64,000 nt of DNA from Mobula birostris (taxonomy: Eukaryota). Both the position numbers and the translations under genes were made by a program. Within the stretch, counting starts at the first letter, position 1. Each line of letters starts with the position of its first letter. Under the pieces are notes generated by a model. The model saw only the letters and a list, made by a program, of their open reading frames with translations. It searched no databases and had not been told where the DNA came from. Below, piece after piece: positions 4,681 to 26,070 of this stretch. The stretch spans positions 17,119,629 through 17,183,628 of the forward strand of contig NC_092384.1 of the NCBI RefSeq assembly GCF_030028105.1. The letters run 5' to 3'.

Positions 4681-4708
4681 TTTATTCTTAAGTTTCTTAC
4701 TTTTATTT
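4681..4708 (-). promoter_or_regulatory. Candidate polyadenylation signals (AATAAA on minus strand) for the receptor gene
   Basis: plus-strand TTTATT twice, about 180-210 bp past the exon 7 stop. Confidence 0.4.
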
Positions 4709-4888
4709 TTTTCCAGTGATAATCGCTTCCAATAAATCGAAGACGAAATTGATCCCTTATCTTCCTAACTTATACATGTAACATCGATTAACAATCTTTG
4801 TCTGGAGGAAAGAAATGAAACGAGGCAATGCCTCGGGCGTGCACTCATTGATAGTCTATAGCTCAAAATTGCAGTTGGATTCTCAGCT

Positions 4889-5020
4889 TCATAGTTTCTT
4901 TGATATATTTACATCTGCATACAATGCATGTTTGTTCTGATATGTGGATGCTGGCGTGTTCTTGGAATCAGGAAGCTGCAGAACAGCGTAAGTCAGTTTG
5001 TCAGCCCCATTTCCTTTAGT
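4889..5020 (-). CDS. Exon 7, terminal cytoplasmic exon with ITIM (TKGNGADKLTYAVLQL...ALYADVNISKKL*)
   Basis: acceptor atgttttcgcag|, phase 0; canonical ITIM LTYAVL, ITIM-like ALYADV, YxN motif TYQN; TGA at 4891-4889. Confidence 0.85.
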   Translation of the reverse strand, partial: TKGNGADKLTYAVLQLPDSKNTPASTYQNKHALYADVNISKKL

Positions 5021-8000
5021 CTGCGAAAACATTTCAGAATCAGAGGTTAATCGGGAATCTATTGAGTTGAACAAATTGAATCAAAAATTGTAAAATAAAT
5101 TAGTGGTACACTCATAAGCTATCAATTTTACAATTTCTGCCGTTTTACACAAAGTTTATGTCAACACTGTTTCACAATTTCCCTTTTTGATTTATATGGT
5201 CCCTGTATTTCAACTCCAAGTGACTGTACGGTCCCACTGAACAATGAGTGTTTCTTTCCTTACTGAAAATGAACTTTAACAAAATCGAGTTGGGAGAGTA
5301 GGTAACTCCTTGAAGCAGCAGGTATAGTAAAAAATATTTCACTAACTCAAAATACAAGAGCATTCTTGCGTTATATGTGTCTGATTGCCGCTAACTTTTT
5401 CGTCTGTAGTTCTTACCTTGTTTCCTCAGTCACACCTGCTAACAGAACTCCAAATGCACACAGACACTGTCATCAGTGGATACCGCACAACTGATAGAAT
5501 GAACGCTGGCACTTTGTTCATTCATGCCGTATGGTTACTGTTTTGTCATAGTTCGGTATTTCCATCAATGACACCAAAGTTCGATTGGTTCAGTATTGCT
5601 CGGTTATTATCAGATATTCGAGCTCATTGTCGAGCTGATAATGGGCGATGGAAAGGTTGGCTATTTCCAGTTTCATGATTTTTTAGTGTTTCCACATTAC
5701 GGATGAAATTAAATTCGTAAAAGCAAGGGTAAAAAATATTATCTCGATGGATTCTGCAGATACTGGAAATCTTGGGGAATGCAAAAGAAATGCTGATGTA
5801 ATTCATTAGGTAAGGCAACATGTGTGACGGTAAATGAACTGTTGATATTTCTGTCCGAAACGCTTTACCAGGACAGCTAAAGAAGGGGGTCAGAAGCTAG
5901 AATAGGAAGGTGAGGAAGGAATACAAGATGACAGGTGATATGAGAAACCCGGTGAGAAAGAATGTGTGTTCATGATGGGGATGGAATGACTTAGAAGCCG
6001 AGAGGTGATGAGTTGAAAAGGAAAAGGGTGCAAGAAGGAATCTGATAGGAGGAGACCGTGGACCCCGGAAGAAATTGAAGAAGGAGAGGACCCAGTGGAG
6101 GTGATGGGCAGATGAGAAGAGACGAGGTGAAAGGGAGCCAGAATTGGGAAAAGAGAAAAAAAAAAGAGAAGGAGTAAATGAAATAAGCATTAAAAATGGG
6201 AGAGATAATGTTCATGCCTTCAGGTTGGAGTCCATCCAGATGGAAGAAAAATGTGATTATATTTTGAGGGTGTTTAGTCGTAAATGATACAGTGACCAAG
6301 GTCTGCTCAGGTCTGTAAAATTAACATCCTTTGGGATATCGTTTATATTTATATTGGAATCGATTGTTAGGAATGAGATTACGGAATACCTGGAGGCACA
6401 TGACAATAGGCCAAAGCCAGCATGGTTTTCTGAAAGGAAAATCCTGCCTGTCTAACCTACCGCTATTTTTTTTTTTGGAGGAAATTGCAAGCAGTGTAGA
6501 CAAAGGAGATGCAGTAGATGTGGTGTACTTAGATTTTCAGAAGGTCTTTGACAAGGTACAGCACATGATGCTGCTTAGCAAGATAAGAGCCCATGGAATT
6601 GCAGAGGCGTTACTAACATGTGTGGAGCATTGCTGATTGGCGGAAGATAGAGAGTGGAATAAAGGGATCCTATTCTGGCTGATTGCCGGTTACCAGAGGA
6701 GTTCCACAGGGTTTGGTGTTGCGACCGCTGCTTTTTATAACGTATATCAATGATTTGGACTATGGAATGAATGGATTTTCGCTAAGTTTACCGATGATAC
6801 AAAGGCAGGTGGAGGAGCCGCTAGTGCTGAGCAAACAGAGCCTGCAGAAAGACTTAGATAGTTTCGGGGAATAGGCAAAAAAATGGCAAATGAAATACAA
6901 TTTTGGAAAGTGTATGGGCATGCACTGTTGTGGAAAAATATACGTGCGGCCTATTATTTAGATGGGAAAAGAATTCAAAATGCAGAGATGCATAGGCAAT
7001 TGTGAGTCCTTGTGCAGGATATCCGGAAGGTTAACCTCCAGGTTGAGTCGGTTGTGAAGAAGGCAAATGTAATGTTGGCGTTCATTTCTCGAGATATAGA
7101 ATATATGAACAAGGATGTGATGTTGAGGCTCTATAAGCAACTCGTGAGACAACACTTGGAGTACTGTTTGCAGTTTTGGGCTCCTTATTTTAGACAGGAT
7201 ATACTGACACTGGAGAGGGTTTAGAGAAGATTCACGAAAATGATTCCAGGGATGAAAGAGTTACCGTATGAGGAACGCCTGGCAGCTCTTGGACTGTATT
7301 CCCTGGGGATCAGGAGTATGGGTTGGGGGGGGGGGGTGGAATCTCATAGAAACATTCCGAATATTAAAAGGTCTGAACAGATTGGATGTGGCACAGTTAT
7401 TTCCCATGGCATGTGAGTCCAGGTCAAGAGGCACCACTTCAGGATGGAATGGTGTCCATTCAGAAAGGGATGCGGAGAAATTACTTTTGTCAGAGGGAAG
7501 TAAATATGTGGAATTTGTTGCAATGAGCGGCTTTGGGAGGCCAAGTCATTGGGTGCATTTAAGGCAGTCATGGAGAGATAGATACATTCTTGATTAGCCA
7601 ATACTGTACATCAAAGTGTATGGGGAGAAGGCAGGGGACTGGGGATGACTGGATGAATTGGATCAGCCCATGATTGAATGACGGATCAGACTGAATGGGC
7701 CGAATGCCCTACTTCGGCTTCTATATTTCATGGTCTTACATATATGTTTTGCGTGACTCGGTAGCGTAGCGGCAAGCATAACTCTATTACAGCAGCAGTG
7801 ATCCAGGTTTAATTCCGTAACCGACGAACTGGTGTGTTTCTACGTTTTTCCATGATCGTATAACTTTCTTTGGGAGCTCAGATTACCTCCCACGTTCGAT
7901 AGACGTACGGGTTAGTCAGCTAATTGGTCACGTGTGTGTAATTGGGTGGCACGAACTATTTGGGCCGGACGGCTCTGTTACAGTGCTAGAATGGCATGCA

Positions 8001-11000
8001 GAACTTTGGGCACCCCTGGTCAAGATTTCTATTACTGTGAATACTTAAGTGGGTAGAAGTTGAACTGATCTCCAAAAGTCATAAAGCTAAAGATGAAACA
8101 TTCTTTTCAACATTTTAAGCAAGATTAGTGTATTATTTTTGTTTTGTACAATTTTAGAGTAAAAAAAAAAGGAAAGGTGCACCATGCAAATGTTTAGGCA
8201 CCCCAAGAGATTTGTGCTCTCAGATAACATTCACCAAGGTCTCAAACCTTATTTAGCATGTTAGGACTATGGCATGCTAACAGTCATCATTAGGAAAGGC
8301 CAGGTGATGCAAATTTTAAAGCTTTATAAATACCCTGACTCCTCAAACATTGTCTCAACAATCAGCAGCCTAGGGCTCCTCTAAGCAGCTGCCTAGCACT
8401 CTGAAAATTAAAATAAATGATGCACACAAAGCAGGAGAAGGCTGTAGGAAGATAGCAAAGCGTTTTCCGGTAGCTGTTTCCTCAGTTGGTAATGTAATTA
8501 GGAAATGGCAGTTAACAGGAGCGGTGGAGATCAAGTTGAGGTCTGGAAGAACAAGAAAACTTTCCGAGAGAACTGCTCGTAAGGATTGCTAGAAAGGCAA
8601 TTCAAAATCCTCCTTTGACTGCAAAAGACCATCAGGAAGATTTAGCAGACTCTGGAGTGGTGGTGCGTTGTTCTACTGTGCAGCGACACCTGCACGAATA
8701 TGACCTTCATGGAAGAGTCATCAGAAGAAAACATTCCTGCATCCTCAGCACAAAATTCAGCGTCAGAAGTTTGCAAAGGAACATCTAAACAAGCCTGATG
8801 CATTATGGAAACAGGTGCTGTGGACTGATGAAATTAAAATAGAACTTTTTGGCCGCAATGAGCAAAGGTATGTTTGGAGAAAAAAAGGGTGCAGAATTTC
8901 ATGAAAAGAACACCTCTCCAACTGTTAAGCACGGGCGTGCATCGATCATACTTTGGGCTTATGTTGCAGCCAGTGGCACGGGAAACATTTCACTGTTAGA
9001 GGGAAGAATGAATGCAGTAAAATACCAGCAAATTCTGAAAGCAAGCATCACACTGTCTGTAAAAAAGCTGATGATGAAAAGAGGATGGCTTCTACAACAG
9101 GATAATGATCCTAAACACACCTCAAAATCCACAATGGACTGCCTCAAGAGGCGCAAGCTGAAGATTTTGCCATGGTCCTCAGAGTCTCCCGATTTAAATA
9201 TCGTCGACAATCTGTGGATAGACCTCAAAAGAGCAGTCCATGCAAGACGGCCCAAGAATCTCATAGAACTAGAAGCCTTTTGCAAGGAGGAATGGGCGAA
9301 AGTCCACCAAACAAGAATTGAAAGGCGCTTAGCTGGCTACAGAAAGCGTGTAGAAGGTATGATACTTGCCAAACGGGGTGTTAGTAAGTACAGACCATGA
9401 AGGGTGTCCAAACATTTGCTTCAGGACCTTACCCTTTTTTGTTACTTTGAAAGTGTAAAATATGGAAATAAAGTTTCCTTGCTTAAAATATTAAATAAAT
9501 GTGTCATCTTTAACTTTATGCCTTTTGGAAATCAGGTCGGCTTTTACTCGCTTAGCTATTCACAGTAACAGAAATTTTGACCAGGTGTGCCCAAACATTT
9601 GCATGCCACTGTATATCTCTAAAGCAAATTCATATGTTATTCATGGCAATCTCTCTGCTTTACCTGAGAATAGATAATGCATTCTTCTTGTTGTCGATCT
9701 TTGCGACATCTATTACTCTCCCAAAGATTTAGTGAAACATAGGGAGTGGTGTGCTCAACCGCAGCTTGGTCAGCCTGTTGGAAAAACACACTTGATACTG
9801 ATAACTGATACAAGGTCAGTGATCATGAACTGTTTGCTTTGGAAAATCTAATTAAAAAAATGATTTTAAAAAAATGGTTAGAATAACATTTTGTCCGCGT
9901 TTTATGATATTGTCCGTATATCATACCAGAGATGGGATACCAAACCCATTTCAGGTTGGAAGTCGCTACGTTTACTATAGATTTCCAAACAACCTCTTAA
10001 AACCATCCTATCAATCGGATGGGTTTTTTAGGTCTGGCCATCTATTTTTTTTATCTCTTCTGTCATATCTCCTACGCCCTTCTAAGTTTTGTGCACGGGC
10101 TTATCCAATGCGTTTCTCTTACGCACCCCGTCAAATTATTATAATTATTGGCATGACCAGATTTCGTCCCCACGCAGCATTTAGAACCTGTGACCCTTCA
10201 GACTCGCATTATCTAGGTTAGGAACATTGGAACAAATGGAAAGACCTGATGTAATGTTCCAGCTTGGCTTAACTGAGGTAGCAAATATGGGAGGGGCATC
10301 TTGTCAGCTGTTGAGTGATTGGTGGTGCTGGTGAATCAATTAAATCACAATCGAAATAAGTAGAGTAATTGGACATGCCCGTTACAGTAAATGGTTTAAA
10401 ATAGCATTTGATTTGGCTGAAGTAATGACAGAGCATTCCAGAGTAATAAAGCGGCACCCAATTGCCCAGCATTGAGAACATCTGCCATAAACGCTGCCTA
10501 GGCAGGGCGAAAAGCATTATCAGGTGTGCATCTCACCCTAACCATGAACTTTCTACTCTCCTCCCATCCTGTAGTCACTACAGGAGCCTCCGCTCTCGCA
10601 ACAGCAGACGCAGGAAGAGTCTCTTCCCTGCGGCTATGACACTGCTGAACCTCTCATCACAGCGCTAAGCAGTATTGCACCCCTATTGTACTGTCTCAGT
10701 ACTTTTATATTTGTGTGCTGTAGCACCTGTTCTATTCGCAGTTATTTTGTATATAACACTATTCTTTGCATTTCTGATGAGATGCTAAATGCATTTCATT
10801 GGCTTTGTATCTGAACTCGGCACAATGACAATAAAGTTGAATCTAATTTAATCTAATCTAAAAAAAAAAATCTTGAACGTTCCAGTTTGAACTTAGATAT
10901 TACTCTCAGAAGCCGTCCTTCATTTCGGGAAGTGCTACAAACGCTGATAGAAGTTTCAACGGAGTTCAACTATAATGAAGCCAGTGGTATATGGCAACCT

Positions 11001-14000
11001 TGTTCTGGTGATGTGAAAAGTTGCTGCAGTAAATATCGTTACGTAAAAGTAAAAATATGCGCTCAAATTGGGAAGGTAATTAACGAACACAAAAAAATGT
11101 TTCCAGTTGTATACAACCGATTAAAATTTAATATGTGCTAACAGGAGGATCCAGCAGGACAAATTTAACAACATTGAACTGCTGGAACTCTGAAGTGAAA
11201 CAAACAAATAAAACACATAGTAGATCAGTAAACACGAGAGCCAAGAGAAACGGTTAACGTTTACGTTGCTTTCTAGGGAGAGGTGTTCAATATGAAAGGA
11301 CAACGTTTTCTCTTTCCCAAGATGTCGTTGGAGATTTTTAATTTCTGGATTAAATCCAAAATGGGAGATGACAATACATTTATACGTTGTAGGCATTTCT
11401 TTCATAATTGAGGACAATAATCATTCAGCGTAGCCTCCTGGAGTAGAAGGCGCCTTGTGGAGTTTCGTTACATGTGGGTATCATTGTGCACCAGATACTA
11501 CATGGTTTATTAGAAGCATATTCGATTCCATTGCAGGTCATGCACTGCTCTGTGGATCTTTGTTGGGAATCGGAGTTAAAAACTACATATGACTTTCCAA
11601 AGCAAGAATTCGTTGCATTTTCAATTTTGATTGTTGTGCTTTCAAATCAGATGTAGCATATATTGCCGGATTTCTAACTTTTGGGATGCTGGGAGGATTG
11701 GGGGTAGTTTTGAATTATGGGGTTTATTGCGGGATTATTTTCTCCAATTTTATTCACTTCTTGTATTCTTTTCCCAGTATGGAGTTCCGGAGCATGCGTG
11801 TTTTCTATATGGTTACACTCATCATCGCCATCTTTGATTAGCCCGCGTTGGTATGCGTGTATTTGCGTGTTAAGAACAATATTTTATGGTAGTTAAACAG
11901 ATAAACGCTATTAGTTGGAACGTACGTGGCTGGAATCACCCTATCAAGCGAAAGAAGACCTTTCAAATTATTAATCGATTCCAGCCCGATGTAATTTTTT
12001 GCTGAAGAAAAGCATATCAGAACGGGCGATCAAAATAGATTTTTTAAAACGTGGAAAGACCTTCAATACCATGCTACCTGTCAAAATAAAACAAAGGGAG
12101 TATCTATTTTTATTAAATCTAGTATTTTATTTATCCAAGAAGACATCATCTCAGATATTAATGGTAGATTTTTAATTGTTGAAGGAACAATTTGTAATAG
12201 AAAAATGTCATGGTTCATCTGTATGGACCTATTGGAGATGATGCTTCTTTTTTAAAAAATGTATTTGGTTTATTACGAGACTTAAAGGAATATATGTTGC
12301 TGATTGGGGGTGACTTCCACTGTTGTTTAAATGCTTAATTGACAAGAGTTTAACCAATCAGCAGCTTCCAAGTTGTTCAGCATCACTTATTAAATCCTTT
12401 TCAATTGATTATGGTTTGATTGAAATCTGGAGAAATCTATCTCCTAATGATAGAGATTATTCTTTTTATACACATATTCATAAAATATTCGAGAATTGAT
12501 TATTTTATAGCTGATTTCCGATGTTTGTCCAAAGTCCAGAAATGTGAATATGACGCTATTGTTGTTTTGGATCATGCACCTTTAAGCTTAACTTTTGAAT
12601 TGAATGGTGTTGGTAATGTAAACTCGTCTTGGCGTTTTCCAGAAAATTCATTACAAGTTCGGACTTCGTGAAATTTTTTGAGACCCAGATAAAAGATTTT
12701 TTTTTCTTTTTATAAGATGAGACATGTGTCGAAATTGATTATATGAGATACATTTAAAGCATATTTGCGAGGTCAGATAATCTCCTATTTGGCGAAGCTT
12801 AAGAAACAGACAAAAGTAGCGTTCGATAGGATTTCAAAACAAATTAAAGACTTAGATATATGCAGTCAGTCCTAATATTGATTTATTTAAACAAGGGGTT
12901 GAACTTCAATCACAATATAATTTACTATAACATATCCTACTGAAATAAATTTGCGTAATTTAAAGTCAATTTTATGTGTTTGGAGATGAAAGTAATAAGC
13001 TATTAGCATCCCAACTAAAGGCAGCTGGAGGTAAAAGACAAATTTTAAAAATTCGTAAGGGATATGATAGTTTAGCTTGTAATTATGAAGACATTAATAA
13101 CATTTTTCAAGACTTTTACAGGGAACTCAATGAATCTCAGTTTCCAGCTGATCCTTCTAATATGAATGACTTTGTACAAAAGATTGACTTTCCTGGAATA
13201 TCTGTTGAGGATCAACAAACTCTTGATACTCCTGTTACTAAAAAAGAAATTCAGAAAACTATTCTTTTAACGCAATCTGGTAAAGCTCCTCGATTGGATG
13301 GTTTTCCTATAGGGTTTTATTAAAAAAAAATGAAGAATTGCTTACTCCTTATATGTTGGAAACGCATAAAGATTTTTTTTTTGTTAGGAGAGTTACCTTC
13401 CATATTTTATGAAGCTTTTATCTCTTTAATTCCTAAGAAAGATAAAGACCCTACTGATTGCGCTTCATATAGACCTATCTCATTATTAAATGTGGATGCG
13501 AAACTTCTTTCAAAAATAATGGCTAATGGACTGGAGAATATTCTAGCTAAAATGATTTCTCAGGACCAAACTGGTTTTATGAAAGGCCGTTATTCCTTAT
13601 ATAAATCTCGGAGACTGTTAAATGGTATATACTCATCCCTTTCTAAGACTCCCCAATGTGTTGTTTCTCTTGATGCTGTAGAGGCATTTGATGGAGTTGA
13701 ATGGAAATACTTATTTAACGTTTTAGAGAAATTCAACTTAGGTACTAATTTTAATGAGTGGAATAGAATGATATATAAACGCCCTATTGCCACTGTTATT
13801 ACTAATAATTGCAGATCCCCTTTTTTCTCCTTTCGCCGGGTACGAGACAAGCATGTCCGTTAAGTCCGTTGTTATTTAATTTGGTATTGGAACCTTTGGC
13901 TATTGCACTTCATGAAGCTAATGAACTTCAAGGAATTTACATTAATGGGACTATTCATAAGATCTCTCTTTATGCTGATGATCTCTTAGTTTATGTTTCG

Positions 14001-17000: not shown

Positions 17001-20000
17001 AAAGATACCTCTGCTCCCACTTTGATGCCATGGTTCTCTCAGGTGATGTTATGTCTTAGTTTGGAGAAAATCAGAAGTCGAAATTCTGATCCTGGATTTG
17101 ACTTTGAGAAAATGTAGGGCTCTATTGCTCGCTACTATCATTTGATTTGAGTTAATTAAGATGGTCCCCTTCTACTTCTTGGGTAAATGGATTTGGTTGG
17201 CGGATTGATATCTTTCTTTTATGGAAGTGTGTATGGTGTATAGCTCCGGGTTTGTGCTCTCAATGTTTTTTTTTTGTTAGTAGGGTTTTTGTTGTTTTAG
17301 TTAGTAGGGGTTCTTTTTTCCTTTTTTCTTTTTTCCAAAAAAAATAGCTTTCACACTTTAAAGTTTCTGGTGAACGCAGCAGGCCAGGCAGCATCTCTAG
17401 GAAGAAGTACAGTCGACGTTTCTGGCCGAGACACTTCGTCAGGACTAACTACAGAAAGAGCTAGTACGAGATTTAAAAGTGGGAGGGGGAGGGGGAGATC
17501 CAAAATGATAGAAGAAGACGGGAGGGTGGGGGGGAATGGAGCCAAGACCTGGACAGGTGATCGGCAGAAGGGGTATGAGAGGATCATGGGACAGGAGAGC
17601 TGGGATTGGGCCTCCTTCGCCTTCTCCCTGGGCCTCCTGTTCCATGGTCCTCTCATACCCCTTCTGCCGATCACCTGTCCAGGTCTTGGTTCCATTCCTC
17701 CGCCCCCCCCCGTCTTCCCCTATCATTTTGGATCTCCCCCCCCCCCACTTTTAAATCTCGTACTAGCTCTTTCTTCAGTTAGTCCTGAAGAAGAGTCTCG
17801 GCCTGAAACGTCGACTGTACCTCTTCCTAGAGATGCTGCCTGGCCTGCTGCGTTCACCAGCAACTTTGATGTGTGTTGTTTGAATTTCCAGCATCTGCAG
17901 AATTCCTCGTGTTTGAACTTTTACATTTTGTTTTTTCTTATTATTATTGATATATTGTTTAGCTTGGTTGATAGCTTAACTCTGATTGCACAGATTGATA
18001 TGTTGACTTGGTCAATTTATGTTTTTTGTTGATTTATAAGAATAATTAATAAAAAAGATAAAAAAACATATATTGCGAAATGATTCATGCGTGTACTGTA
18101 TTTTCCCATTGACCACTACACCGCGATTCTCGTAAGCCGACATTTGACATTTAAAACATCTCAGTCTTTGATTTATATTTAATTATTCGTCACACGAAGC
18201 ATGTCTAACAGCCTAACTTCCGTTAATATATATTACCCTTCATCTTAATGCAACTGGTTATGAACTATTGTGGAATCCTGAAAGACAATAGGAAGCGGAT
18301 AAAACAGGAATATTCAAATCCATCCTGGATATATACTTCAAAATAAAAAGTTGTCCGATAATTTCATTCTTCCCTACTGCGTTCCAAATGTTTAAACGAA
18401 ATAAATTTATAATATCTCTGCTATCCGTATACGCCGCTCTGAAAGAAGACAGGTCACTTCACCTACCGGCTCTTCATTCTGACATCTGTCCAAAGAACGT
18501 GTGTTTTTCCCTTAAGAAAAATAAAAGAAATTATTTGCAATGTAAAAATTGGATATTATTTGTTTGATACCAATCGAATTCATCGCGTAAGAGGAACTGC
18601 TGAAGGTACGGATCTTTCAGAAAGCATTTTGTGGTAGCAGTTGTCTTAATGCTGTGCAACAACATCATGGTACTATGCTCAAGAGTCTTCGACTTTTAAC
18701 GAAGCTGTAAAGTGATAATAGTATATGAGTGGCTGTACTATATTTAAGTACTGTCTTTAAAATAGAAATTAAAATTAATGAGACATGCATGAATTCGTCA
18801 ATGTTCTTTAAACAGTGACAGTAAGCATAGACCAACGCCAGGTTGCTTACGCCTCAAACTATAGACCTGCCCTTGTATCGAAAACGACATTTGAAATATT
18901 CCAAAGGTATATAACGGCATTTATGGACAAGATACAGTATGTAAATACAGCGAGTAGACTGGTGAAATTAATGCATTTTAAGATCCAGCTTGTGTTGTGC
19001 CTGATGATTATCAATGTAATCAGGTTCGACCATGTCAATCCCTGTCTAATCATGCTGTAATGACATTTATTCTTTTTGAAGTTAAGTATCTTTAGCGCAT
19101 CAGTTTTTCAGGAATAGAGGTGATATTTCTCAGCAATCAGGGTTCTTACCGTGCGATCTCTTTAACTTGACTTTCACCAAAATTATTATCAGAACTAAAA
19201 TTGCCGATCCGCCCAGTGCACATGCCAGAATCAATTTAGTATCAGCGCCTTGTGGCTCTACAGGGGTAAAACAAGAAACTGTGAAGCACTTATACATCTA
19301 AAAAAATGCACTCATGAGAATCAATAATGCAAAATATCTAATAGGCTCCTTTCAAATCTCACTGCACAATATCGGAAAATATGTCATAAGACAGGAAATG
19401 CAGATTCCCACCTTTGTTATATCACGATGAGATGTAGAGTTTACGTTTTGCTTTTCTCAATTTTGTCAAACGTTCAGAAGTTTGCTACCTTACAAATACT
19501 GCACGAATTCAAATTCTTAATTCGTCCTACACGATTTAAGCGAACGGAATAACACGTAAGTTTTTGAACACATTTCCCGTTCAATACTCACTGTCAATTA
19601 TTAAACTTCAAAATTAGTCATTCTTCCGTGTTTGGGTAGCTGTTCAGTAACAGTTCTGAAGAAGGTCACATTGACCCAACCACTTTGACTTGTAAGCGCT
19701 TCCATCTTACTATGAGCGCAAAAGATTCTGAACATGCTGAAATTCAGAATAGCACTTAAAATCCTGGAAGAACTCAGCCGATCAGGCAGATCTAAAATGT
19801 CGACGTTTAAGGCCGAGATACGACATCAAGACACCATCTTACCTTGGTCCTGGATGTAACTGAAATTGGCAGGCACCGGGAGGGAGACATGCGACACCAG
19901 ACAAGTGTAAACATCTTTTCCCCGAGTAGACTGCGTGATATCCAATAAACTAAATGCTCCGTACAAGCCGTCCACGCTCCGGTTTGTCACACTTTCTATT

Positions 20001-23000
20001 CCAGTGCGAATTTGCTTGTTATTTCTTTGCCAAACGATTTCTAATTTCTCCGGGTAGAAGGCAGCCGTTTTACAAAGGAGCTTTCGAGGAGACGAAAACC
20101 CTCCAACAGGAACAATTTCCACTGGAGTTGGAGGAGCTTGGGTAAAAACAAAGTTATTCTGGGTATTTTCGATCCATTTCAGTACAGGTAGCTCCCTTTA
20201 TCTCCCCGCCAACTAGCATGACACTCAACTATCAAATTAGTTCCCCGCCGGTATTGACCAGTATTTAATAAATTCAATTTCACGTTCTGTTTATTGTTTT
20301 TCAACCGTACACACACTCCGAAGCGAACCTTTGTTCTTCTGGCGCTCAGTTGCAAAAACAGTATATATAGTCACATACAGCACATATAGTTACCATCCAG
20401 CACTGACAGTCACAAAATAAGCAAAATAAAATACAGTCAGTTTGGGAAAAGGATGAGAGGAAGAGTTCAGAGAATACACCTCGACGGCGAAGCTAAGAGG
20501 TCCGAAGTGTGGAGACATTCTCTTTTGAATGGTATTTGAGCTTTATTGCACATTTGGGCTTGTGGCAGGCGTTAGCTTTGAAAACCTGACTACAATTGGA
20601 TTTTTAATTTCCTATCAAGACTGAGCTACAAGACCTAAAATATCACAGATTTCTATAGTACGAATGCACATGGAGTTTAATGTTCTGGCAGCTCAGCTGC
20701 TTAGGGAGTGTTTCAAGTCTTGGGGTTGAACTTTATAGTCATAAGCATTCAGTAATAGAAATTACTCCGGAATGTGATCCATTCCTGGAACAGTTACCCC
20801 GTATTGAACGTGACAAATCATCTTCTCCGTGAAACATCCAGTCATCTAAATGCAAATTAGATTAAGTTGATTGATTCTACAGTTCTGTTCTTTCTAAAGC
20901 CTGAAGACCTGCAGCAAAACGGTCGACAGTGACTTGGCACTGCTATAGGATCATTTGTGGAAATGATGCCTTGTAGAGGGTCAATCAGGAATTGAACAAC
21001 TTCAATTTCACCATGCACAGTGTTTACTAAAACTTGAGCCCAATTTTAAGATTTTGTAAACGTGGACCACTTCCGCCACAGCTATGGTCGGTGTCTGACA
21101 GGGTAGATTCAATAGTTAGATTGTTCTATCTGTTTATCACAGGTTAGGGTTTCACACTGCCTACAATAGTCATCCTGAGCGTTGCCTGACTCCACTTCCC
21201 ACGCCAATACCGAAGTCAACGTTCTTGGCTTTCTCAAATTCTAGGTAAAGGACAATTCTAAGCTGAAAAAAAAATCGAAGGGCTTAGACAGATATAAGCA
21301 TAAAGGGATAGCGACAGACAAAATTGATCCATTTGAAGATCAGCGGGTTTAACAATTCATGGAGCCGAAAGAGCTTGGACCTTATATATTTCGATTTGTA
21401 TTTATTCTGGAGACGTACACAGAGACTAAGGCAAAACAGAAGGAGTATCATGGCCCATATACCGATTACAGTCTTGAGGCAAATTAGGGTGTAGAAGTCC
21501 CCAGAACATGGCAAGTTGTCCCATCGGACCTTTTCGGAAGCTAGTGCAGAAAGTGAAAGAGCCCCGATAGAGGATTCAAAATATCCTTACCCGTGGGTGA
21601 AGTGCCGGAGGACTAGAGTAAACTAATGTTTTAAGACCATATAACTATAGGATATAGGAGCCTAATTAGGCCCTTTGGCCCACCAAGTTTGCTCTGCCAT
21701 TTCACCATAGCTAATATTTTCTGTTCAGCCCCAATCTCCTGCCTTCTCCCCATTGCTCGTCATGCTCTAACCAATCAGGAATCTATCAGCCTCTGCTTGA
21801 AATATTCATAAAGGCTTGGTCTCCATAGCTGCCTGTGGCAAAAAAAAAAAAAAATTCTACAGGTTCTGCACTCTCTGGCCATAGGCTGTCCTCTTCATCT
21901 CCTCTGGTCTTAGACTCTCCCACCATAAGAAGCATCCTCTCCACATGCACACGATTAAGGGCTTTCACCTTTCTTAAGGGCTCAATGCCGTTGCCCCTAG
22001 TTTTTTTCTGAACTCTAGTGCAATGAGGCCTAGAGCCATAAAACGTTCTTCATATGACTAGCTATTGAATTTTGGAACCATTGCCATAAACGTCCTTTGA
22101 ATCTTCTCCAGTTTCAGCATATTCTTTCCAAGAAAAGGGGTGTAAAACTGCCCACAATAAGCCGTGCCTCCTCACCAGTGCCTTATAAAGTCTGAACCTT
22201 ACATCCTGGCTTATATATTCTATTCCTCTTGGAATGAATGCGACCGTTGCATTTACCTTCCTGACCACAGACGCAACCTGCAAATTAACCTGTATGAAAT
22301 ACTGCACAGGGACTCGCAAGTCCCTTTGCACCTCAGTGTTTTTTGTGTTTTCTCTCCAGTTGGAAAATATTCAAAACTTTCACACCCTCCACCAAACTGC
22401 GTGCCACACACTTCTCGACACTGTATTCCATCGGCCATTTCTTTGCCTGACCTCCTAATCTGTCTCAGTCCTTCTGTAGCTTCTCTATTTCCTAAAACTA
22501 CTTGGCTGTCGACCTCTCTTCATATCGTCCGCAAACTTTGCAACAAACCATCAATTCCATCATCCATATCATTGACATGTGACCTTAAACGAATTAGTTA
22601 CAACACAGACCCCTGTGGAACACCGTTAGTCTCGAGCAGCCAACCAGTAAATGCTCCCTTTATTCCCATACTATGTCTCTTACCAACCAGCCACTGCTTT
22701 ATCCACCCTAGAATCTTTACTGTAATACTTGGGACTAGTAGCTTGTTTAACAGCCTTGTGTGTGGTACTTTGTCAAAGACCTTCTGAAAATCCAAGTACA
22801 CAACAACCAATTGCCAATCTTTATCTATCCTGCTTTTTATTATTTCAAATATTTCAATCAGATTGTCTGGCGAGAGTTTCCTTTAAGGAAATCATGCTGA
22901 CAATGGCGTGTTTTATTATGTGTTTCTGAGTAACCTAAGACCTGATCCTTAATGATGGACTCCAACATCTTGTCAACCAGTGAGGTCAGAGTGATCGGCC

Positions 23001-25936
23001 TATAGTTTCCCTTTTCTGCCTCCTTGCCTTATTGAAGAGTGGAGTGATATTTGAAAATTTCCAGTATTCCAGAACCATTCCAGAATCTAGTAATTCTTGA
23101 AAGACCTTTACTGATGCCTCCAGAATCTCTCAGCAACTTCTATCAGAATCATGAGATGTACATAATCTGGTCTAGGTGAATTACCTACTTTCAGACCTTT
23201 CAGTTTCCCAAGAACTTGCTCTCCAATTATGTCTCTAGTTTTGCCGTTGTTCAAGGTAGACTGTCGGAATAAGCCGGAATATTATAGACTAGTTGGTATT
23301 ACAGTAAAGCGGGTGATTTATTGGAAGATATTCCAAAGATTAGGATATATAAATATATAGATAGACTGGGCTTGTTTGGGAATAAGCAATATTATTTTGT
23401 GCAATGTAGGCTCTGTCTGACCAATCTTAATGAGCTTTTCGAGTGGGTTACCATAGATCTTTGATAACAGTGGATATGGTCAACATGGATTTTAGCAAAG
23501 GAACGTCGACTCAGACCATGAGACGACTGCGTCGGGCATTTTCATGCTTTACAAAGCGCAGATTGGAAGTCTGTGTGGGGCGCCACTCCTCGCACAGACT
23601 AGAGCAATGAGTGATTAAGTGCCTTGCTCAAGGGCACACACACGCGGCCACAGCTGAGACGCGAAGTAGCGACGTTGAGATAACTAGACGAACGCCTTAA
23701 CCATTTGGCCACGTGCCCAACACTTTGGAAATGTTCCGCATGGGGGTAGTGGGCTAATCAAGTACGTTCGCTTGGCATTCAGGATGAAGGAGTGAATTGT
23801 GTCTGACGTTGGCTTCGCAGGAGAAGCCAGAGTATGGTAGTAGATGGTTGTTCTTTGAACGAAGGCCTTTGACTGGTGGTGTGCCGCATGGTGATCACAT
23901 ATTGCAGCGGGTTAAGGACCAGGTGTAAAAACGGGCTGAAAATAGCAGATAGGATTTAATGAAGGTAATTGTAAGCTGTTGTTCTTTGAGAAGACAAACC
24001 ATTCTCGGATATACACATTGAACGAAACTGGCATTGAGGAGTGCGGTAAAAAATGATCTTGGAATTATAGATCGATAATTCATTGAAAATGGAGTCAAAG
24101 GCGAATGGTATCGTAAAGATAACCTTTGTCATATTGGCCTTCATATATCAGAGTATTGAGTGTAGAAGTTGGGATGCTATGCTGAAGATGTATTAGACGT
24201 CAGTGAGAACAAATTTGGAGTGTTGTTCGCAGTTCTCGTTACTTATCTGCAGGAAAGTTATCAGTATGTTTGAATGAGTAGAAAGAAAACTTGCTTCATG
24301 TGGCATGAATTTGAGGACGTGAATTATGAGGAAAGTTTAACAGGTAAAGATTTTTTTTCCATCATTCGTAAGAGAACGAGCGAACATTTGATAGACGTAT
24401 ACGAAATTATGAGGGATGTAGATATGGTGCATGTAAGCCTGCATCATCCACTGAGGTTGGGTGAGAATGTAATTGGAAGTCATAGCTTCAGAGTGAAATG
24501 AGAAGTATTAAAGGCGAACCTGAGGGGAAACGTCTTCACTCTGACGGTGAAGCTATTGTGGAATGAGCTGACAGCGCAGGTGTTAGCGCTCGACTCTCTA
24601 CGCTTTACTATTCAACCCCATCAAAATTCACCTCAATCTTGAGAGGTCGATATTTCTGACCGTTTTGTATGGTGAAAGAAGTATAGATTTTGCTAATCCT
24701 GCATGATAAAAGTTGGAATGACAATTTGTAGTGCATGCGACAAATTATTACTTGATGTTAGAATTAACTCTTTTGGAGCTGGGTATTATTCCTGTCTACT
24801 TGTTGATGCGGAAATGGAGTATTGTGCTGCTGCATGCAGACCCTTTGATCGAGATTACTCTATTTAAGTATTAATATTTTGCGTCCTCTGTGATGAGGAA
24901 TCGAGTTATCCAACTCCAGCCATTCACATTAATATTAATATTATTTCAGCCTCTTGCTTGCAACACATTCCTAACCTTGCTTGAAAAGTAATTCGTTATA
25001 TTCAAAGTACCTTCGCGATAATGAGGGTAACGTCCTAAACTATCACTAACCTTGGACATTCGGTTTAATTGGGAGATAACTGATGAGCAGGGCTGGTCGA
25101 ACAGCAGTGGGAAAGAGCCGGGGAAGTACGATACGATTTACGGAATCAACTCCACTATGCGCCTAATAGTTGCTACATGAAATGTGATTAATTTTTCTAC
25201 TCTTTATAATTCTGAATTTAGAATCCCTGGACTGGGGTATATTTTAACACGGAAAACAAATGTATTCTCACCGTTTGTTTTATCAAGTAGAAACATTTCG
25301 TTTTATCCCCATCACTAAGTTTGATGTAAAATGCACAGAGCCGAAAATCTCCAAAGAGCCACACTCACCGAACACAGTGAACTTGGTGCCACCTCCAGTC
25401 CCTAAGTATTGTTCCTGAAACTTTACTGTACAGTAATACAGCCCAGAGTCGCTGAATTTGACATTCCAGAGTACAAGTGTTCCTCTTCCCCTTTCTATAG
25501 TAAATTGTCTTCTGCTGTCCCTTTCTAAAAACCCCTTCTCGCCTTTCCTCCACCAAACGACGTCAACGGTATCTTGTGATAGTGGAAATTTGCAGAACAT
25601 GGTAATATTCGCACCACTCGGGACGTTCAGGTCCCGTGGGAATTGAGATACTTCGTTCGCCGTTACTTTGACGACTGCCGGAAAAATAAGCAAGAGTATT
25701 AATAACAGTTAAACACAGTGAATTAACAAAACTTGATGACGTAATTCACTGGACATCTAACAGCGAAAGACGACCGAATAGATTAAAAAAAAACTGCAAC
25801 CGAATATGCTGCAGGCACCCTGGGTTAAATATTATTAAACGGAATATTCAATTCGGAAACGGCGTGTATAAATCAGCATACTTAGCCAAGTAATAGCCAG
25901 AAGTGCCATGTACGAAACCGTAAACTTCTCCGCCAT
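4889..25936 (-). CDS. Spliced 7-exon gene: type I membrane Ig-superfamily receptor, leader-V(J)-C1-TM-cytoplasmic ITIM-like tail (SIRP-like/NKp30-like V), 349 aa
   Basis: join(complement 25936-25882, 25674-25369, 20136-19843, 19257-19150, 18510-18467, 9774-9664, 5020-4889) = 55+306+294+108+44+111+132 = 1050 nt; all GT-AG; phases 1,1,1,1,0,0 are compatible; no internal stops. Family assignment is from motifs, not a database search. Confidence 0.88.
6305..7740 (+). mobile_element. Degenerate CR1 LINE 3' part (RT to 3' UTR), in intron 6
   Basis: SQHGFLKGKSCLSNL, VDVVYLDFQKVFDKV, GVPQGLVLRPLLF, VRQHLEYCLQFWAP in broken frames. Confidence 0.9.
7755..7988 (+). mobile_element. tRNA-derived SINE, 3' tail split by Tc1 (tail resumes 9612-9625)
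   Basis: A/B-box-like head (gtagcgtagcgg...gatccaggtttaattcc); tail ctgttacagtgcTA|Tc1|TAtatctctaaa. Confidence 0.65.
7989..9611 (+). mobile_element. Tc1/mariner DNA transposon, defective
   Basis: terminal inverted repeats (tggcatgca...tgggcacccctggtcaa...ttactgtgaata and its reverse complement), TA TSD; transposase remnants WTDEIK, QQDNDPKH, SPDLNIVDNLW (catalytic E appears as D); start ATG appears as TAG; frameshifts. Confidence 0.92.
9664..9774 (-). CDS. Exon 6, cytoplasmic tyrosine-motif exon (ADQAAVEHTTPYVSLNLWESNRCRKDRQQEECIIYSQ)
   Basis: acceptor gtgtgtttttccaacag|, donor CAG|gtaaag; phase 0-0, open; TPYVSL and IIYSQ motifs; reading through the donor gives IIYSQVKQRDCHE* (stop 9639-9637). 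Confidence 0.78.
10440..10862 (+). mobile_element. 3' end of Rex1/Babar-like non-LTR element with (AATCT)n tail
   Basis: PSIENICHKRCLGRAKSII...HPNHELSTLLPS...YRSLRSR C-terminal motif; aataaagttgaatctaatttaatctaatcta tail. Confidence 0.7.
14466..15956 (+). mobile_element. Young 5'-truncated CR1 inserted in L1 ORF2, with an internal RT deletion
   Basis: 358-aa ORF (KSPGPDG, YRPVSLTS, LDFQKAFDKVPH joined directly to NLADDTK); (TTTCTATG)n tail; L1 reads KDGG|insert|FALPN. Confidence 0.92.
17361..17912. mobile_element. Penelope-derived inverted terminal-repeat pair (foldback hairpin)
   Basis: ~230-bp arms (~17365-17590 versus ~17640-17875) are reverse complements. Confidence 0.85.
17781..17816 (+). 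ncRNA. Hammerhead motif in the Penelope hairpin arm (mirror copy on minus at 17411-17446)
   Basis: AGTC-CTGAAGA-AGA(GTCTCGG)CCT-GAAACGTC-GACT; stem II mismatch. Confidence 0.55.
18467..18510 (-). CDS. Exon 5, short juxtamembrane cytoplasmic exon (GKNTRSLDRCQNEEP)
   Basis: acceptor tttcttttatttttcttaag|, donor CCG|gtaggt; phase 1 to 0 bridges the TM exon and the tail exons. Confidence 0.8.
19150..19257 (-). CDS. Exon 4, connecting peptide and transmembrane segment
   Basis: acceptor tttcttgttttacccctgtag|, donor CACG|gtaaga; EPQGADTK-LILACALGGSAILVLIIILV-KVKLKRSH; uncharged TM followed by a basic stop-transfer; not in the ORF track. Confidence 0.9.
19843..20136 (-). CDS. Exon 3, C1-set Ig domain
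   Basis: acceptor tttgtttttacccaag|, donor CAAG|gtaaga; LLCKTAAFYPEKLEIVW, DGLY, YTCLVSHVSL (C1 signature YxCxVxH); sequons NRS and NFS. Confidence 0.95.
21460..24580. mobile_element. Cluster of old CR1 fragments in both orientations, plus a SINE at ~23500-23720 (V-C1 intron)
   Basis: VYLDFQKVFDKVPHTRL and GVPQGSVL (minus, 21640-23220); plus-strand CR1 3' remnants 23230-24580; AAGTGCCTTGCTCAAGGGCACA SINE core. Confidence 0.75.
25369..25674 (-). CDS. Exon 2, V-set Ig domain with J-like G strand
   Basis: acceptor ttgcttatttttccggcag|, donor TTCG|gtgagt; B-strand Cys (TMFC), C-strand Trp (VVWWR), DSGLYYC, GTGGGTKFTV; sequon NIT. Confidence 0.95.
25882..25936 (-). CDS. Exon 1, leader (MAEKFTVSYMALLAITWL)
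   Basis: taagATGG Kozak context; donor CTAA|gtatgc, phase 1; 207-bp intron; joins exon 2 to give signal peptide ...MALLAITWLIVKVTA/NEVSQ. Confidence 0.8.
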
Positions 25937-26070
25937 CTTACAGAAACCAAATGGACCAATTCTTGCAATGCAAGTGGTATTTTAAAGAATTTGCCGGAGG
26001 AAAAGGACTTCGCGAGGAAATGTATTAATCATGCAAACATGACGCAGGATGACGCCACCGCAAGGCAGAA
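25937..26070 (-). promoter_or_regulatory. Candidate proximal promoter of the receptor gene
   Basis: GAGGAAAT (ETS-like, ~26014), ATGCAAAC (octamer with 1 mismatch, 26031), two TGACG CRE half-sites (26040, 26050), ACCGCA RUNX site (26057) within 130 bp of the ATG. Confidence 0.35.

What the first reader, a model, noticed from the sequence alone, without database searches (positions are those of the whole stretch)
4889..25936. Complete non-rearranging VJ-C1 inhibitory receptor gene hidden among TEs
Seen: seven exons with canonical splice sites and matching phases give a 349-aa leader-V-C1-TM-tail protein; four of the exons (leader, TM, exons 5 and 6) are absent from the ORF track. Established: V with a J-like GxGT strand plus a C1-set domain is the antigen-receptor (TCR/IgL) architecture, and C1-set domains are otherwise largely confined to Ig, TCR, MHC, tapasin, SIRP and B7-H6-type proteins. 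Human SIRPalpha has V-C1-C1 with four cytoplasmic Tyr. Inference: this is a germline-encoded single-C1 SIRP-like/antigen-receptor-like inhibitory receptor of a cartilaginous fish, relevant to the question of what the pre-RAG VJ-C1 ancestor and its sister genes looked like.
Basis: partly seen in the sequence, partly recalled or inferred. Interest (0 to 1): 0.85.

Follow-up and report, generated by a model that had tools for sequence, protein, structure and literature searches.

The report
Manta ray SIRP-like inhibitory receptor gene
This is a real, spliced gene of the giant manta ray for a cell-surface immune receptor with an antibody-like tip, one antibody-type constant domain and an inhibitory tail; it is already predicted in RefSeq under misleading names and is one copy of a large family found across sharks, rays and chimaeras.

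Summary
Seven minus-strand exons (25936-4889) with GT/AG sites and matching phases give a 349-aa leader-VJ-C1-TM-tail protein. It is letter-for-letter RefSeq XP_072135226.1 of Mobula birostris ("NCR3 ligand 1-like isoform X1"). Isoforms X2/X3 of the same gene are named "SIRP-alpha-like". So the gene sits among TEs but is not hidden from annotation.

Pfam calls V-set and C1-set. All three C1 hallmarks and the J-like GxGT strand are present. RNA-library contigs confirm junctions 2-3 and 3-4 of this gene and hold the last exon. Junctions 4-5 and 5-6 are seen only in relatives or paralogs.

It belongs to a multigene family found in my searches only in cartilaginous fish, chimaera included, with at least four old subfamilies. 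Some members have long ITIM tails, some short tails, and a few a charged transmembrane segment. The V domain diverges faster than C1.

Best reading: an inhibitory, SIRP-like paired-type receptor that recruits SHP phosphatases (inferred). Orthology to SIRP, B7-H6 or UrIg could not be resolved.

This scan has already followed up sister genes on other DNA of this genome, with the same conclusion. I found no paper on the family in the held library. Verdict: new member of a known kind, moderate interest.

The parts
25882..25936 (-). Exon 1: start codon and most of the signal peptide (split leader), ends in phase 1
   Evidence: Sequence read; identical to residues 1-18 of XP_072135226.1; tblastn with P0157 gives 94%
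25369..25674 (-). Exon 2: end of leader plus V-set domain with germline-joined J-like strand (GTGGGTKFTVF), donor G|GTGAGT in phase 1 as after a J segment
   Evidence: Pfam V-set E=1.3e-12; DSGLYYC and GxGT motifs; RNA contig in X1 joins its last 30 nt to exon 3
19843..20136 (-). Exon 3: C1-set constant domain
   Evidence: Pfam C1-set E=1.3e-11; FYP, 13 residues Cys-to-Trp, C-L-V-S-H; AF2 model pLDDT 90; spliced to exon 4 in X2 contig with no mismatch
19150..19257 (-). Exon 4: short stalk, uncharged transmembrane helix (LILACALGGSAILVLIIILV) and basic stop-transfer KVKLKRSH
   Evidence: joint 19257|19843 (X2) and 18510|19150 (X4)
18467..18510 (-). Exon 5: 44-nt cytoplasmic exon (GKNTRSLDRCQNEEP), shifts phase 1 to 0
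   Evidence: Among the sixteen 44-nt candidates, the one picked for its pyrimidine tract and GTAGGT donor; 80% identical to the same stretch of P0011; RNA depth at 18443-18505 and none beyond
18410..18466 (-). Open read-through of the exon-5 donor (VGEVTCLLSERRIRIAEIL-stop): possible alternative short, ITIM-less tail
   Evidence: Same C-terminus ends annotated paralogs P0020 and P0161; no RNA depth here at 18380-18442 in the four runs laid, so unproven for this gene
9664..9774 (-). Exon 6: phase 0-0 cassette with Tyr281 (TPYVSL) and Tyr304 (IIYSQ); skipped in RefSeq isoform X2
   Evidence: P0159 (X2) equals the model minus these 37 residues; 76-78% identical to P0002/P0157
4889..5020 (-). Exon 7: Tyr317 in canonical ITIM LTYAVL, Tyr333 (YQN), Tyr340 (LYADV), stop TGA
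   Evidence: 79% of sampled words of 4700-5020 held by RNA runs X1 and X2; conserved KLTYAAL ... YAxV block in the family alignment

Best explanation
The locus is an intact, transcribed gene of Mobula birostris. It encodes a type I membrane receptor of the immunoglobulin superfamily. The parts in order are: signal peptide; one V domain whose J-like G strand is encoded in the germline in the same exon, so no rearrangement is needed; one C1-set domain; a short stalk without cysteine; an uncharged transmembrane helix; and a 103-residue tail with five tyrosines.

Inferred mechanism: the variable V domain binds a still unknown ligand through its loops. Src-family kinases then phosphorylate the tail tyrosines (LTYAVL is a canonical ITIM; TPYVSL and LYADV are ITIM/ITSM-like, each pair 23 residues apart). 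SH2 phosphatases of the SHP-1/SHP-2 type dock there and damp activation of the cell.

Skipping of exon 6, and possibly read-through after exon 5, would tune or remove this signal. The gene is one member of a fast-turning-over, clustered, chondrichthyan-wide family that behaves like a paired-receptor family of the SIRP/KIR/LILR kind. Members with near-identical ectodomains carry either ITIM tails, short tails, or a charged transmembrane residue.

Shown: gene structure, domains, splicing of exons 2-3-4, transcription of exon 7, family membership. Inferred: inhibition, SHP recruitment, pairing, cell type.
For: - Exon model and exact identity to XP_072135226.1.
- V-set and C1-set by Pfam.
- C1 hallmarks FYP, C-13-W and CxVxH, as defined in PMC2785349.
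- Confident two-domain AF2 model, pLDDT 90.3, pTM 0.78.
- V-C1 matches to SIRP-alpha, TAPBPR, B7-H6 and Ig light chains at E 1e-13 to 1e-11; highest TM 0.77 to rat and mouse SIRP-alpha.
- Spliced RNA contigs with empty introns; exon 7 held in RNA runs.
- The tail block KLTYAAL...YAxV is conserved from Callorhinchus to Mobula.
- Of 54 family proteins with a detectable TM, 22 have ITIM/ITSM tails, 32 do not, and 5 have a charged TM core.
- The nearest paralog P0164 is 93-94% identical in V and C1 but has a different TM with an Arg and a short tail.
- V is less conserved than C1 in 160 of 171 paralog pairs (65% vs 78%).
- SIRP-alpha clusters are nearest by language-model features.
Against: - No protein-level, phosphorylation or ligand data exist.
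- Only one of the five tyrosines sits in a strictly canonical ITIM. The C-terminal motif has Ala at -2, where relatives have Thr, Ser or Leu.
- A YxN motif (Tyr333) could recruit Grb2-type adaptors, so signalling may not be purely inhibitory.
- Junctions 4-5 and 5-6 were seen only in another organism code or in a paralog-like contig.
- Tissue and cell type are unknown because run metadata are coded.
- Human B7-H6, which NCBI's name points to, is a ligand rather than a receptor and also has a V-C1-like ectodomain.
Confidence: 0.75

Rival explanations
1. It is the cartilaginous-fish orthologue lineage of SIRP proper: a myeloid 'self' checkpoint that binds a CD47 orthologue, with the second C1 domain either not yet gained or lost.
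For: Language-model nearest clusters are SIRP-alpha (0.97, 0.96). The best global TM-score is to SIRP-alpha d1-d2 (0.77). It has a VJ-type V plus C1. The tail has two tyrosine pairs, and from memory SIRP-alpha has two ITIM pairs with similar spacing. Some family members are V-C1-C1 (P0174, P0194). NCBI names isoforms X2/X3 SIRP-alpha-like.
Against: No tree with SIRP references and no synteny could be made here. Identity to SIRP-alpha is only 18-21%, the same as to TAPBPR, B7-H6, PD-L1 and Ig light chains. The family profile found no SIRP among 6910 word-sharing candidates. The tandem C1 copies in P0174 and P0194 are near-identical recent duplicates, not the old d2/d3 pair. There are many fast-diverging V domains per genome, unlike a receptor for one conserved ligand.
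Confidence: 0.2
2. It is a B7-H6 (NCR3LG1)-type ligand displayed to NKp30-like receptors, as NCBI's name for isoform X1 implies, and its tail motifs are secondary.
For: Foldseek match to B7-H6 at E=5e-13, TM 0.69. RefSeq naming. The literature reports multi-copy B7H6/NKp30 co-evolution from sharks to mammals (recalled from memory; not readable here).
Against: The V domain carries the antigen-receptor-type G-x-G-T J strand, and the intron after it is placed as after a J segment. Pfam scores C1-set at 45 bits against the CD80-like C2-set at 13. Paired ITIM-like tyrosines conserved for the whole age of the family argue for a signalling receptor. The RefSeq names vary among six unrelated proteins, so they carry no weight.
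Confidence: 0.07
3. It is a member or offshoot of the UrIg/UrIg2 lineage, or another direct relic of the non-rearranging antigen-receptor precursor. It would work as a disulfide-linked dimer like an antibody or TCR chain.
For: The family C1 profile hits single UrIg2 C domains (PDB 9dmx) at 41 and 39 bits, second only to an Ig lambda constant domain at 48 bits. It has a split leader and a VJ exon, as described for UrIg/UrIg2 (PMC12227049). The V part alone is nearest to clusters named 'antigen receptor' (0.94).
Against: There is one C domain, not 3 or 9-11. There is no stalk or interchain cysteine. The tail is ITIM-bearing, whereas UrIg is secreted and the cited text describes no ITIM for UrIg2. 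Linkage to the MHC or the antigen-receptor complex was not shown. The family has many copies per genome, whereas the cited text presents UrIg and UrIg2 as single paralogous genes.
Confidence: 0.06
4. This copy is a transcribed but functionally decaying member of a birth-and-death cluster (a decoy or a gene on its way to a pseudogene).
For: The C-terminal motif is degenerate (Ala at -2). The J motif sequon NGT, common in the family, is lost. Neighbouring copies are truncated or scrambled according to unchecked scan notes. A degenerate TM-like exon lies at 59285-59196. Introns are swollen with TEs.
Against: All seven exons are open with consensus splice sites. All invariant family residues are kept. 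RNA contigs match it exactly.
Confidence: 0.05

Closest known systems
SIRP-alpha / SIRP family (SHPS-1, CD172a)
   Same: Non-rearranging V domain with a J-like strand followed by C1-set domain(s). Type I membrane protein with a tail carrying paired ITIM-type tyrosines. The family mixes inhibitory, short-tailed and charged-TM members (paired receptors). Highest whole-model TM-score (0.77) and nearest language-model clusters.
   Different: One C1 domain instead of two. Only about 20% identity. Many divergent V domains per genome. Orthology, synteny and CD47 binding are untested. Five tyrosines, only one in a strict ITIM.
UrIg and UrIg2 of elasmobranchs (PMC12227049; PDB 9dmx)
   Same: Cartilaginous-fish, non-rearranging, single-exon VJ with split leader followed by C1-type domains. 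The family C1 profile matches UrIg2 C domains at about 40 bits each.
   Different: UrIg has 3 C domains and is secreted. UrIg2 has 9-11 C domains. Both form disulfide-linked dimers and are presented as single paralogous genes linked to the MHC or the Ig/TCR complex. This gene has one C1, no stalk cysteine, an ITIM tail and many paralogs.
B7-H6 (NCR3LG1)
   Same: V plus C1-like ectodomain, membrane-bound, tail with tyrosine motifs. It is the RefSeq name of isoform X1. Foldseek E=5e-13.
   Different: B7-H6 is a ligand of NKp30. The J-type G-x-G-T strand seen here is, from memory, not a B7 feature. Identity is about 20%.
Ig light chains / TCR chains
   Same: VJ-C1 order, a phase-1 intron right after the J strand, and C1 hallmarks. 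The best single-domain profile hit of the C1 is an Ig lambda constant domain (48 bits).
   Different: V and J are joined in the germline with no gene segments. It has its own TM and signalling tail. The predicted V-C1 arrangement is extended rather than elbowed (TM only 0.40-0.43 to light chains).
PRARP (Fu et al. 2019, J Immunol; cited in PMC10751288)
   Same: [quoted passage not shown]
   Different: From memory, PRARPs have V only or V-C2, not C1. The paper is not held in the library and no PRARP sequence could be compared.
Reptile and amphibian multi-VJ ITIM receptors (unnamed; e.g. turtle 'polymeric Ig receptor-like' proteins)
   Same: Among the hits I checked, the nearest V-domain relatives outside cartilaginous fish by exhaustive HMMER (25-36% identity in those whose taxa I looked up). 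They have J-like strands and VTYADL...VVYAEV tails.
   Different: They have tandem arrays of 2-6 V domains and no C1 domain.

Membership tests
IgSF C1-set domain | (F/Y)(F/Y/H)P at the start of the BC loop (Hatherley 2009, PMC2785349) | tested here: met
   FYP at residues 147-149 of the 349-aa product; F and Y-P are invariant or nearly so in the family
IgSF C1-set domain | Exactly 13 residues between the B-strand Cys and the C-strand Trp | tested here: met
   C-KTAAFYPEKLEIV-W = 13
IgSF C1-set domain | x-V-x-H after the F-strand Cys; Pfam PF07654 above gathering score | tested here: met
   C-L-V-S-H; PF07654 at 45.1 bits against a cut-off of 21
VJ-type V domain (antigen-receptor-like, non-rearranging) | V-set fold with D-x-G-x-Y-x-C and a G-x-G-T-x-(L/F)-x-V G strand, encoded with the V in one exon and followed by a phase-1 donor | tested here: met
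   DSGLYYC, GGGTKFTV, a single 306-nt exon, donor G|GTGAGT; PF07686 E=1.3e-12; the RNA contig carries the germline V-J end spliced to C1
ITIM-bearing inhibitory receptor | Uncharged TM and at least one cytoplasmic (S/I/V/L)-x-Y-x-x-(I/V/L) | tested here: met
   TM LILACALGGSAILVLIIILV; LTYAVL at Tyr317
ITIM-bearing inhibitory receptor | Tyrosine phosphorylation and recruitment of SHP-1/SHP-2 or SHIP | not testable with these tools
   Needs pervanadate treatment and co-immunoprecipitation
SIRP family | V-C1-C1 ectodomain | tested here: not met
   This gene has a single C1 exon. V-C1-C1 occurs in some relatives through recent C1 duplication (P0174, P0194)
SIRP family | Groups with SIRPs in V and C1 trees, and lies in conserved synteny with the SIRP locus | not tested
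   No SIRP reference sequence could be obtained. The window holds only TEs besides the gene. Neighbour look-ups showed only the queried gene itself, or in Callorhinchus one more C1-set gene
SIRP family | Binds CD47 through the V-domain loops | not testable with these tools
   Needs a binding assay
UrIg / UrIg2 | VJ followed by three or more C1-type domains; disulfide-linked homodimer | tested here: not met
   One C1; the cysteines are only the two intradomain pairs, one in the TM and three in the tail (PMC12227049)
Rearranging antigen receptor (Ig/TCR) | Separate V and J (and D) segments | tested here: not met
   V and J are continuous in one germline exon
B7 family / B7-H6 | Groups with B7/butyrophilin V and C domains; acts as a ligand of a CD28/NKp30-type receptor | tested here: inconclusive
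   Foldseek scores to B7-H6, PD-L1 and CD276 are no better than to SIRP, TAPBPR or Ig light chains; Pfam prefers C1-set over CD80-like C2-set

The most novel reading that the evidence does not exclude
The chondrichthyan VJ-C1-TM-ITIM family to which this gene belongs may be the basal-gnathostome representative of the SIRP lineage, or a sister of the Ig/TCR/UrIg stem. That would mean a membrane-bound, single-C1, inhibitory, germline-joined VJ-C1 receptor, already organised as paired inhibitory/activating genes, existed when antigen receptors arose. It would be an independent outgroup for rooting V and C1 trees of Ig, TCR, UrIg and SIRP.
Probability: 0.2. Interest if true: 0.65.

Novelty: new member of a known kind. 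Interest (0 to 1): 0.35.

Why it matters
Non-rearranging genes that join a VJ-type V domain to a C1 domain are the objects searched for in work on the origin of antibodies and T-cell receptors (PMC12227049, PMC10751288, PMC2785349). In the papers I could read, the discussion rests on UrIg, UrIg2, NKp30, PRARP and SIRP. Neither of the two elasmobranch papers mentions SIRP (no occurrence of 'SIRP' in PMC10751288; none in PMC12227049). No library search turned up a paper on this large, computer-annotated family.

If it were properly placed by trees and synteny, it would do one of two things. It could extend the SIRP lineage to the base of jawed vertebrates. Or it could add a further old VJ-C1 lineage with a clear inhibitory signalling design.

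For the single gene in this window the result is more modest. It is a correctly predicted, expressed family member, and its RefSeq names (B7-H6-like, SIRP-alpha-like) should not be taken as orthology.

Tried and rejected
1. Laying reads on 19990-25989 to see junctions 1-2 and 2-3 failed. Only one stretch (18380-20260) could then be laid, so junctions 1-2 and 6-7 were never seen directly.

2. Two family-profile searches of the 5.8-billion-protein index were meant to pull in the next-nearest families for a tree. They returned only cartilaginous-fish members, then three chance-level hits. So no SIRP, B7-H6, NKp30, UrIg or Ig/TCR reference sequences were available, and no rooted cross-family tree could be built.

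3. PDB profile searches are dominated by multi-domain proteins whose scores add up (titin, contactins, whole antibodies). Only per-domain scores in the printed alignments were usable.

4. Foldseek against Swiss-Prot models and the PDB confirms V-C1 but does not discriminate between families.

5. Synteny: the window holds nothing but TEs besides the gene. Neighbour look-ups returned no DNA for the manta assembly and only another C1-set gene in Callorhinchus.

6. The idea that exons 6 and 7 are duplicates of one another has equal tyrosine spacing, but the alignment score is not above shuffles.

7. A language-model search with the tail alone gave only weak, unrelated small adaptor proteins.

8. 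A second paralog in the window was considered. Only a degenerate TM-like stretch at 59285-59196 (E about 0.06) was found; the other weak hits are noise.

9. The papers on UrIg (PMC10530332) and on NKp30/B7H6 co-evolution (PMC4594805) are not held.

Full report
WHAT IS THERE

Reading the minus strand between 25936 and 4889 gives seven exons with canonical AG/GT borders and compatible phases.
- Exon 1 (25936-25882) holds the ATG and 18 codons of a hydrophobic leader, and ends in phase 1.
- Exon 2 (25674-25369, 306 nt) completes the leader and encodes a whole V domain, including DSGLYYC and the J-like strand GTGGGTKFTVF. It ends G|GTGAGT in phase 1, as the intron after a J segment does.
- Exon 3 (20136-19843, 294 nt) is a constant-type Ig domain.
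- Exon 4 (19257-19150) is a short stalk, an uncharged transmembrane helix and a basic stop-transfer.
- Exon 5 (18510-18467, 44 nt) moves the frame to phase 0.
- Exon 6 (9774-9664) and exon 7 (5020-4889) encode the rest of the tail.

The spliced CDS is 1050 nt and encodes 349 residues.

The introns hold reverse-transcriptase fragments. The rest of the 64-kb window holds an LTR retroelement and LINE remains, and no other host gene.

IT IS ALREADY PREDICTED

An exhaustive HMMER search with the V exon found single-domain relatives of 240-410 residues. Cluster look-ups showed they are RefSeq models from rays, sharks and a chimaera.

One of them, P0186 = XP_072135226.1 of Mobula birostris, is identical to my model letter for letter. 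Its gene spans 21,048 bp on an 86.2-Mb chromosome of assembly GCA_030028105.1, which is the exact length of 4889-25936. The window is therefore giant manta ray.

RefSeq calls this isoform 'natural cytotoxicity triggering receptor 3 ligand 1-like'. It calls isoforms X2 (exon 6 skipped, P0159) and X3 of the same gene 'tyrosine-protein phosphatase non-receptor type substrate 1-like'. Paralogs are named after Ig lambda, TCR beta, MHC class II alpha, PD-L1, CD276 and tapasin. Such names reflect best hits of single Ig domains and carry no orthology.

RNA EVIDENCE

One of the two read-laying runs was lost to a filter. The other, on 18380-20260 with four RNA-library runs, shows depth on exons 3, 4 and 5 and none in the introns. 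In detail:
- A contig of run X2 skips 19258-19842 exactly, with no mismatch. This confirms junction 3-4.
- A contig of X1 ends at the exon-3 acceptor and runs on into 159 letters. The first 30 are the reverse complement of this gene's own V-exon end, including the GGG codons that tell it apart from its nearest paralog. This confirms junction 2-3 and shows the germline VJ sequence in RNA.
- A contig of X4, a different organism code, joins 19150 to 18510.
- The contig that leaves exon 5 at 18467 continues into exon-6-like letters that differ at 3 of 30. They translate as AEQAAVEHTT, the sequence of paralog P0151. So this junction is shown for the family, not for this copy.
- There is no depth over the read-through ORF at 18380-18442.

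Exon 7 with its 3'UTR is held at 79% of sampled words by X1 and X2.

DOMAINS

Pfam gives V-set (E=1.3e-12) and C1-set (E=1.3e-11, 45 bits against a cut-off of 21; CD80-like C2-set only 13 bits).

Hatherley et al. (PMC2785349) give three sequence hallmarks of C1-set domains. All three are present: FYP, exactly 13 residues between the B-strand Cys and the C-strand Trp, and C-L-V-S-H.

An AlphaFold2 model of residues 20-219, built with a 21-sequence family alignment, is confident (pLDDT 90.3, pTM 0.78). It shows two beta-sandwich domains.

Foldseek against Swiss-Prot models finds these proteins at E between 1.4e-13 and 3e-11 and 16-23% identity: tapasin-related protein, Ig lambda, B7-H6, PD-L1, CD276, TCR beta and SIRP-alpha. 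The highest global TM-score (0.77) is to rat and mouse SIRP-alpha. Ig light chains and TCR beta score only 0.40-0.43, because the model is extended, not elbowed.

In a family C1 profile search of the PDB, the best single-domain scores printed are an Ig lambda constant domain (48 bits) and the C1 and C3 domains of UrIg2, PDB 9dmx (41 and 39 bits).

A protein-language-model search puts two SIRP-alpha clusters nearest to the whole protein (0.97, 0.96). For the V part alone the nearest cluster is one named 'antigen receptor'. These are leads, not tests.

THE FAMILY

Two word-indexed searches of 5.8 billion proteins, one with a close relative and one with a 22-sequence profile, returned 34 and 44 strong hits. 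All identifiable ones are from cartilaginous fish. The genera, adding those, are Mobula, Hypanus, Hemitrygon, Narcine, Pristis, Amblyraja, Leucoraja, Heterodontus, Heptranchias, Pristiophorus, Scyliorhinus, Chiloscyllium, Hemiscyllium, Stegostoma, Carcharodon, Mustelus and Callorhinchus.

Scores then drop from 151 to 34 bits. That gap is partly a property of the word index.

In the exhaustive V-domain search, the nearest non-chondrichthyan proteins I checked are turtle, snake, gecko and toad receptors made of several VJ domains with ITIM tails, at 25-36% identity in those whose taxa I looked up.

A quick ML tree of 54 ectodomains shows at least four well-supported old subfamilies shared by sharks and rays. 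It also shows a stingray-specific expansion of 19 sequences, with one-to-one pairs between M. birostris and M. hypostoma.

The window gene groups with P0164 (M. birostris) and P0168 (M. hypostoma). P0164 is 93% identical in V and 94% in C1, but it has a different transmembrane exon with an arginine and a short tail without ITIM.

Among the 19 stingray sequences the V domain is less conserved than C1 in 160 of 171 pairs (means 65% and 78%).

Of 54 family proteins with a recognisable TM, 22 have ITIM/ITSM tails, 32 do not, and 5 have a charged residue in the TM core. Some members have two near-identical C1 domains.

This is the pattern of a birth-and-death family of paired receptors.

THE TAIL

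The tail has five tyrosines: 281 (TPYVSL), 304 (IIYSQT), 317 (LTYAVL), 333 (STYQNK) and 340 (ALYADV).

Only Tyr317 fits the strict ITIM consensus. At the Tyr340 position relatives have TLYADV, SVYAQL or LVYAAV.

The block KLTYAAL-x(about 20)-YAxV is kept from Callorhinchus to Mobula, which argues for function. Tyr281-Tyr304 and Tyr317-Tyr340 are each 23 residues apart, a spacing that would suit tandem SH2 domains (inference). The similarity of exon 6 to exon 7 is not above shuffled controls (p about 0.14).

Exon 6 is a symmetric phase 0-0 cassette and is skipped in RefSeq isoform X2.

Reading through the exon-5 donor gives VGEVTCLLSERRIRIAEIL-stop. Nearly the same ending terminates annotated paralogs P0020 and P0161. 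So an ITIM-less short form by intronic termination is a plausible family feature, but it was not seen for this gene in the runs laid.

WHAT IT MOST LIKELY DOES

The gene most likely encodes an inhibitory leukocyte receptor. Its diversifying V domain would bind a ligand, and its phosphorylated tail would recruit SHP-type phosphatases. Splice variants and short-tailed or charged-TM paralogs would act as modulators or counterparts.

This rests on architecture and on conservation. No step of signalling has been observed.

COMPARISON WITH WHAT IS KNOWN

It works like SIRP-alpha and shares its VJ-plus-C1 design. It fails the V-C1-C1 criterion, and orthology is untested.

It is not a UrIg/UrIg2-type gene as described in PMC12227049. 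It has one C domain, no interchain cysteine, an ITIM tail and many copies.

It is not a rearranging receptor.

B7-H6 cannot be excluded by fold, but the J-type strand, the C1 score and the conserved tyrosine pairs speak for a receptor.

In the held library I found no paper describing this family. 'SIRP' does not occur in either of the two elasmobranch papers I searched.

EARLIER NOTES OF THIS SCAN

Notes of this scan (unchecked AI notes) report sister genes on other pieces of this genome. Follow-ups reached the same verdict: real, transcribed, computer-annotated, unstudied family. I reached mine independently, from the identity to RefSeq and from the searches above.

VERDICT

The gene is a new (unstudied) member of a known kind of receptor. 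The family as a whole, not this copy, is what deserves a proper phylogenetic and syntenic study.

Noticed in passing
window 59196-59285 (-): A degenerate transmembrane-exon-like stretch (LILACSQGGSAIFGQLIIFEERISKGLNGK; about 50% identical to the TM exon of the gene, tblastn E about 0.06). It lies upstream of the gene and has no V or C1 remnant nearby. It may be a relic of a lost paralog.
   Followed up: partly
window 34232-40185 (-): An LTR-retroelement body. ORFs match RNase H of reverse transcriptase (E=9e-37), an integrase zinc-binding/core/C-terminal domain (488-aa ORF) and a SCAN-type gag-like domain (E=8e-25). This is the G+C-rich block (50-55%) of the window.
   Followed up: partly
window 6331-7597 (+), 12976-15857 (+), 22062-22882 (-), 44822-45409 (+): Several LINE-type reverse-transcriptase fragments. 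Those at 6.3-7.6 kb, 13-15.9 kb and 22.1-22.9 kb lie inside introns 6, 5 and 2 of the receptor gene. Two stretches with strong positive GC skew (+0.31 at 6-8 kb and 14-16 kb) overlap two of them. A stretch at 50-54 kb has strong negative GC skew (-0.35 to -0.39) and may be the same kind of element on the other strand.
   Followed up: partly
window 8849-9400 (+): A 183-aa ORF that looks by eye like the C-terminal half of a Tc1/mariner-type transposase (QQDNDPKHTS ... motif), inside intron 6 of the gene. It was not run against Pfam.
   Followed up: no
window 53709-54308 (-): An ORF with OSK / GDSL-lipase-like domain matches (E about 1e-7 to 6e-8), as in the esterase ORF1 of some CR1-type LINEs.
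   Followed up: no
proteins P0039, P0119, P0122, P0178, P0212 (sharks; not in the window): In five shark members of the family the TM segment has a conserved basic residue (Arg in most) followed by ...LAFLVIL...IIV(D/E)H..., with a short tail. They are candidate activating counterparts of the ITIM-bearing members.
   Followed up: partly
proteins P0046, P0070, P0086, P0098, P0147 (turtles, viper, gecko; not in the window): Reptile receptors made of 2-6 tandem VJ-type V domains with VTYADL...VVYAEV tails. They are the nearest V-domain relatives outside cartilaginous fish and carry unrelated RefSeq names (pIgR-like, titin-like, obscurin-like).
   Followed up: partly
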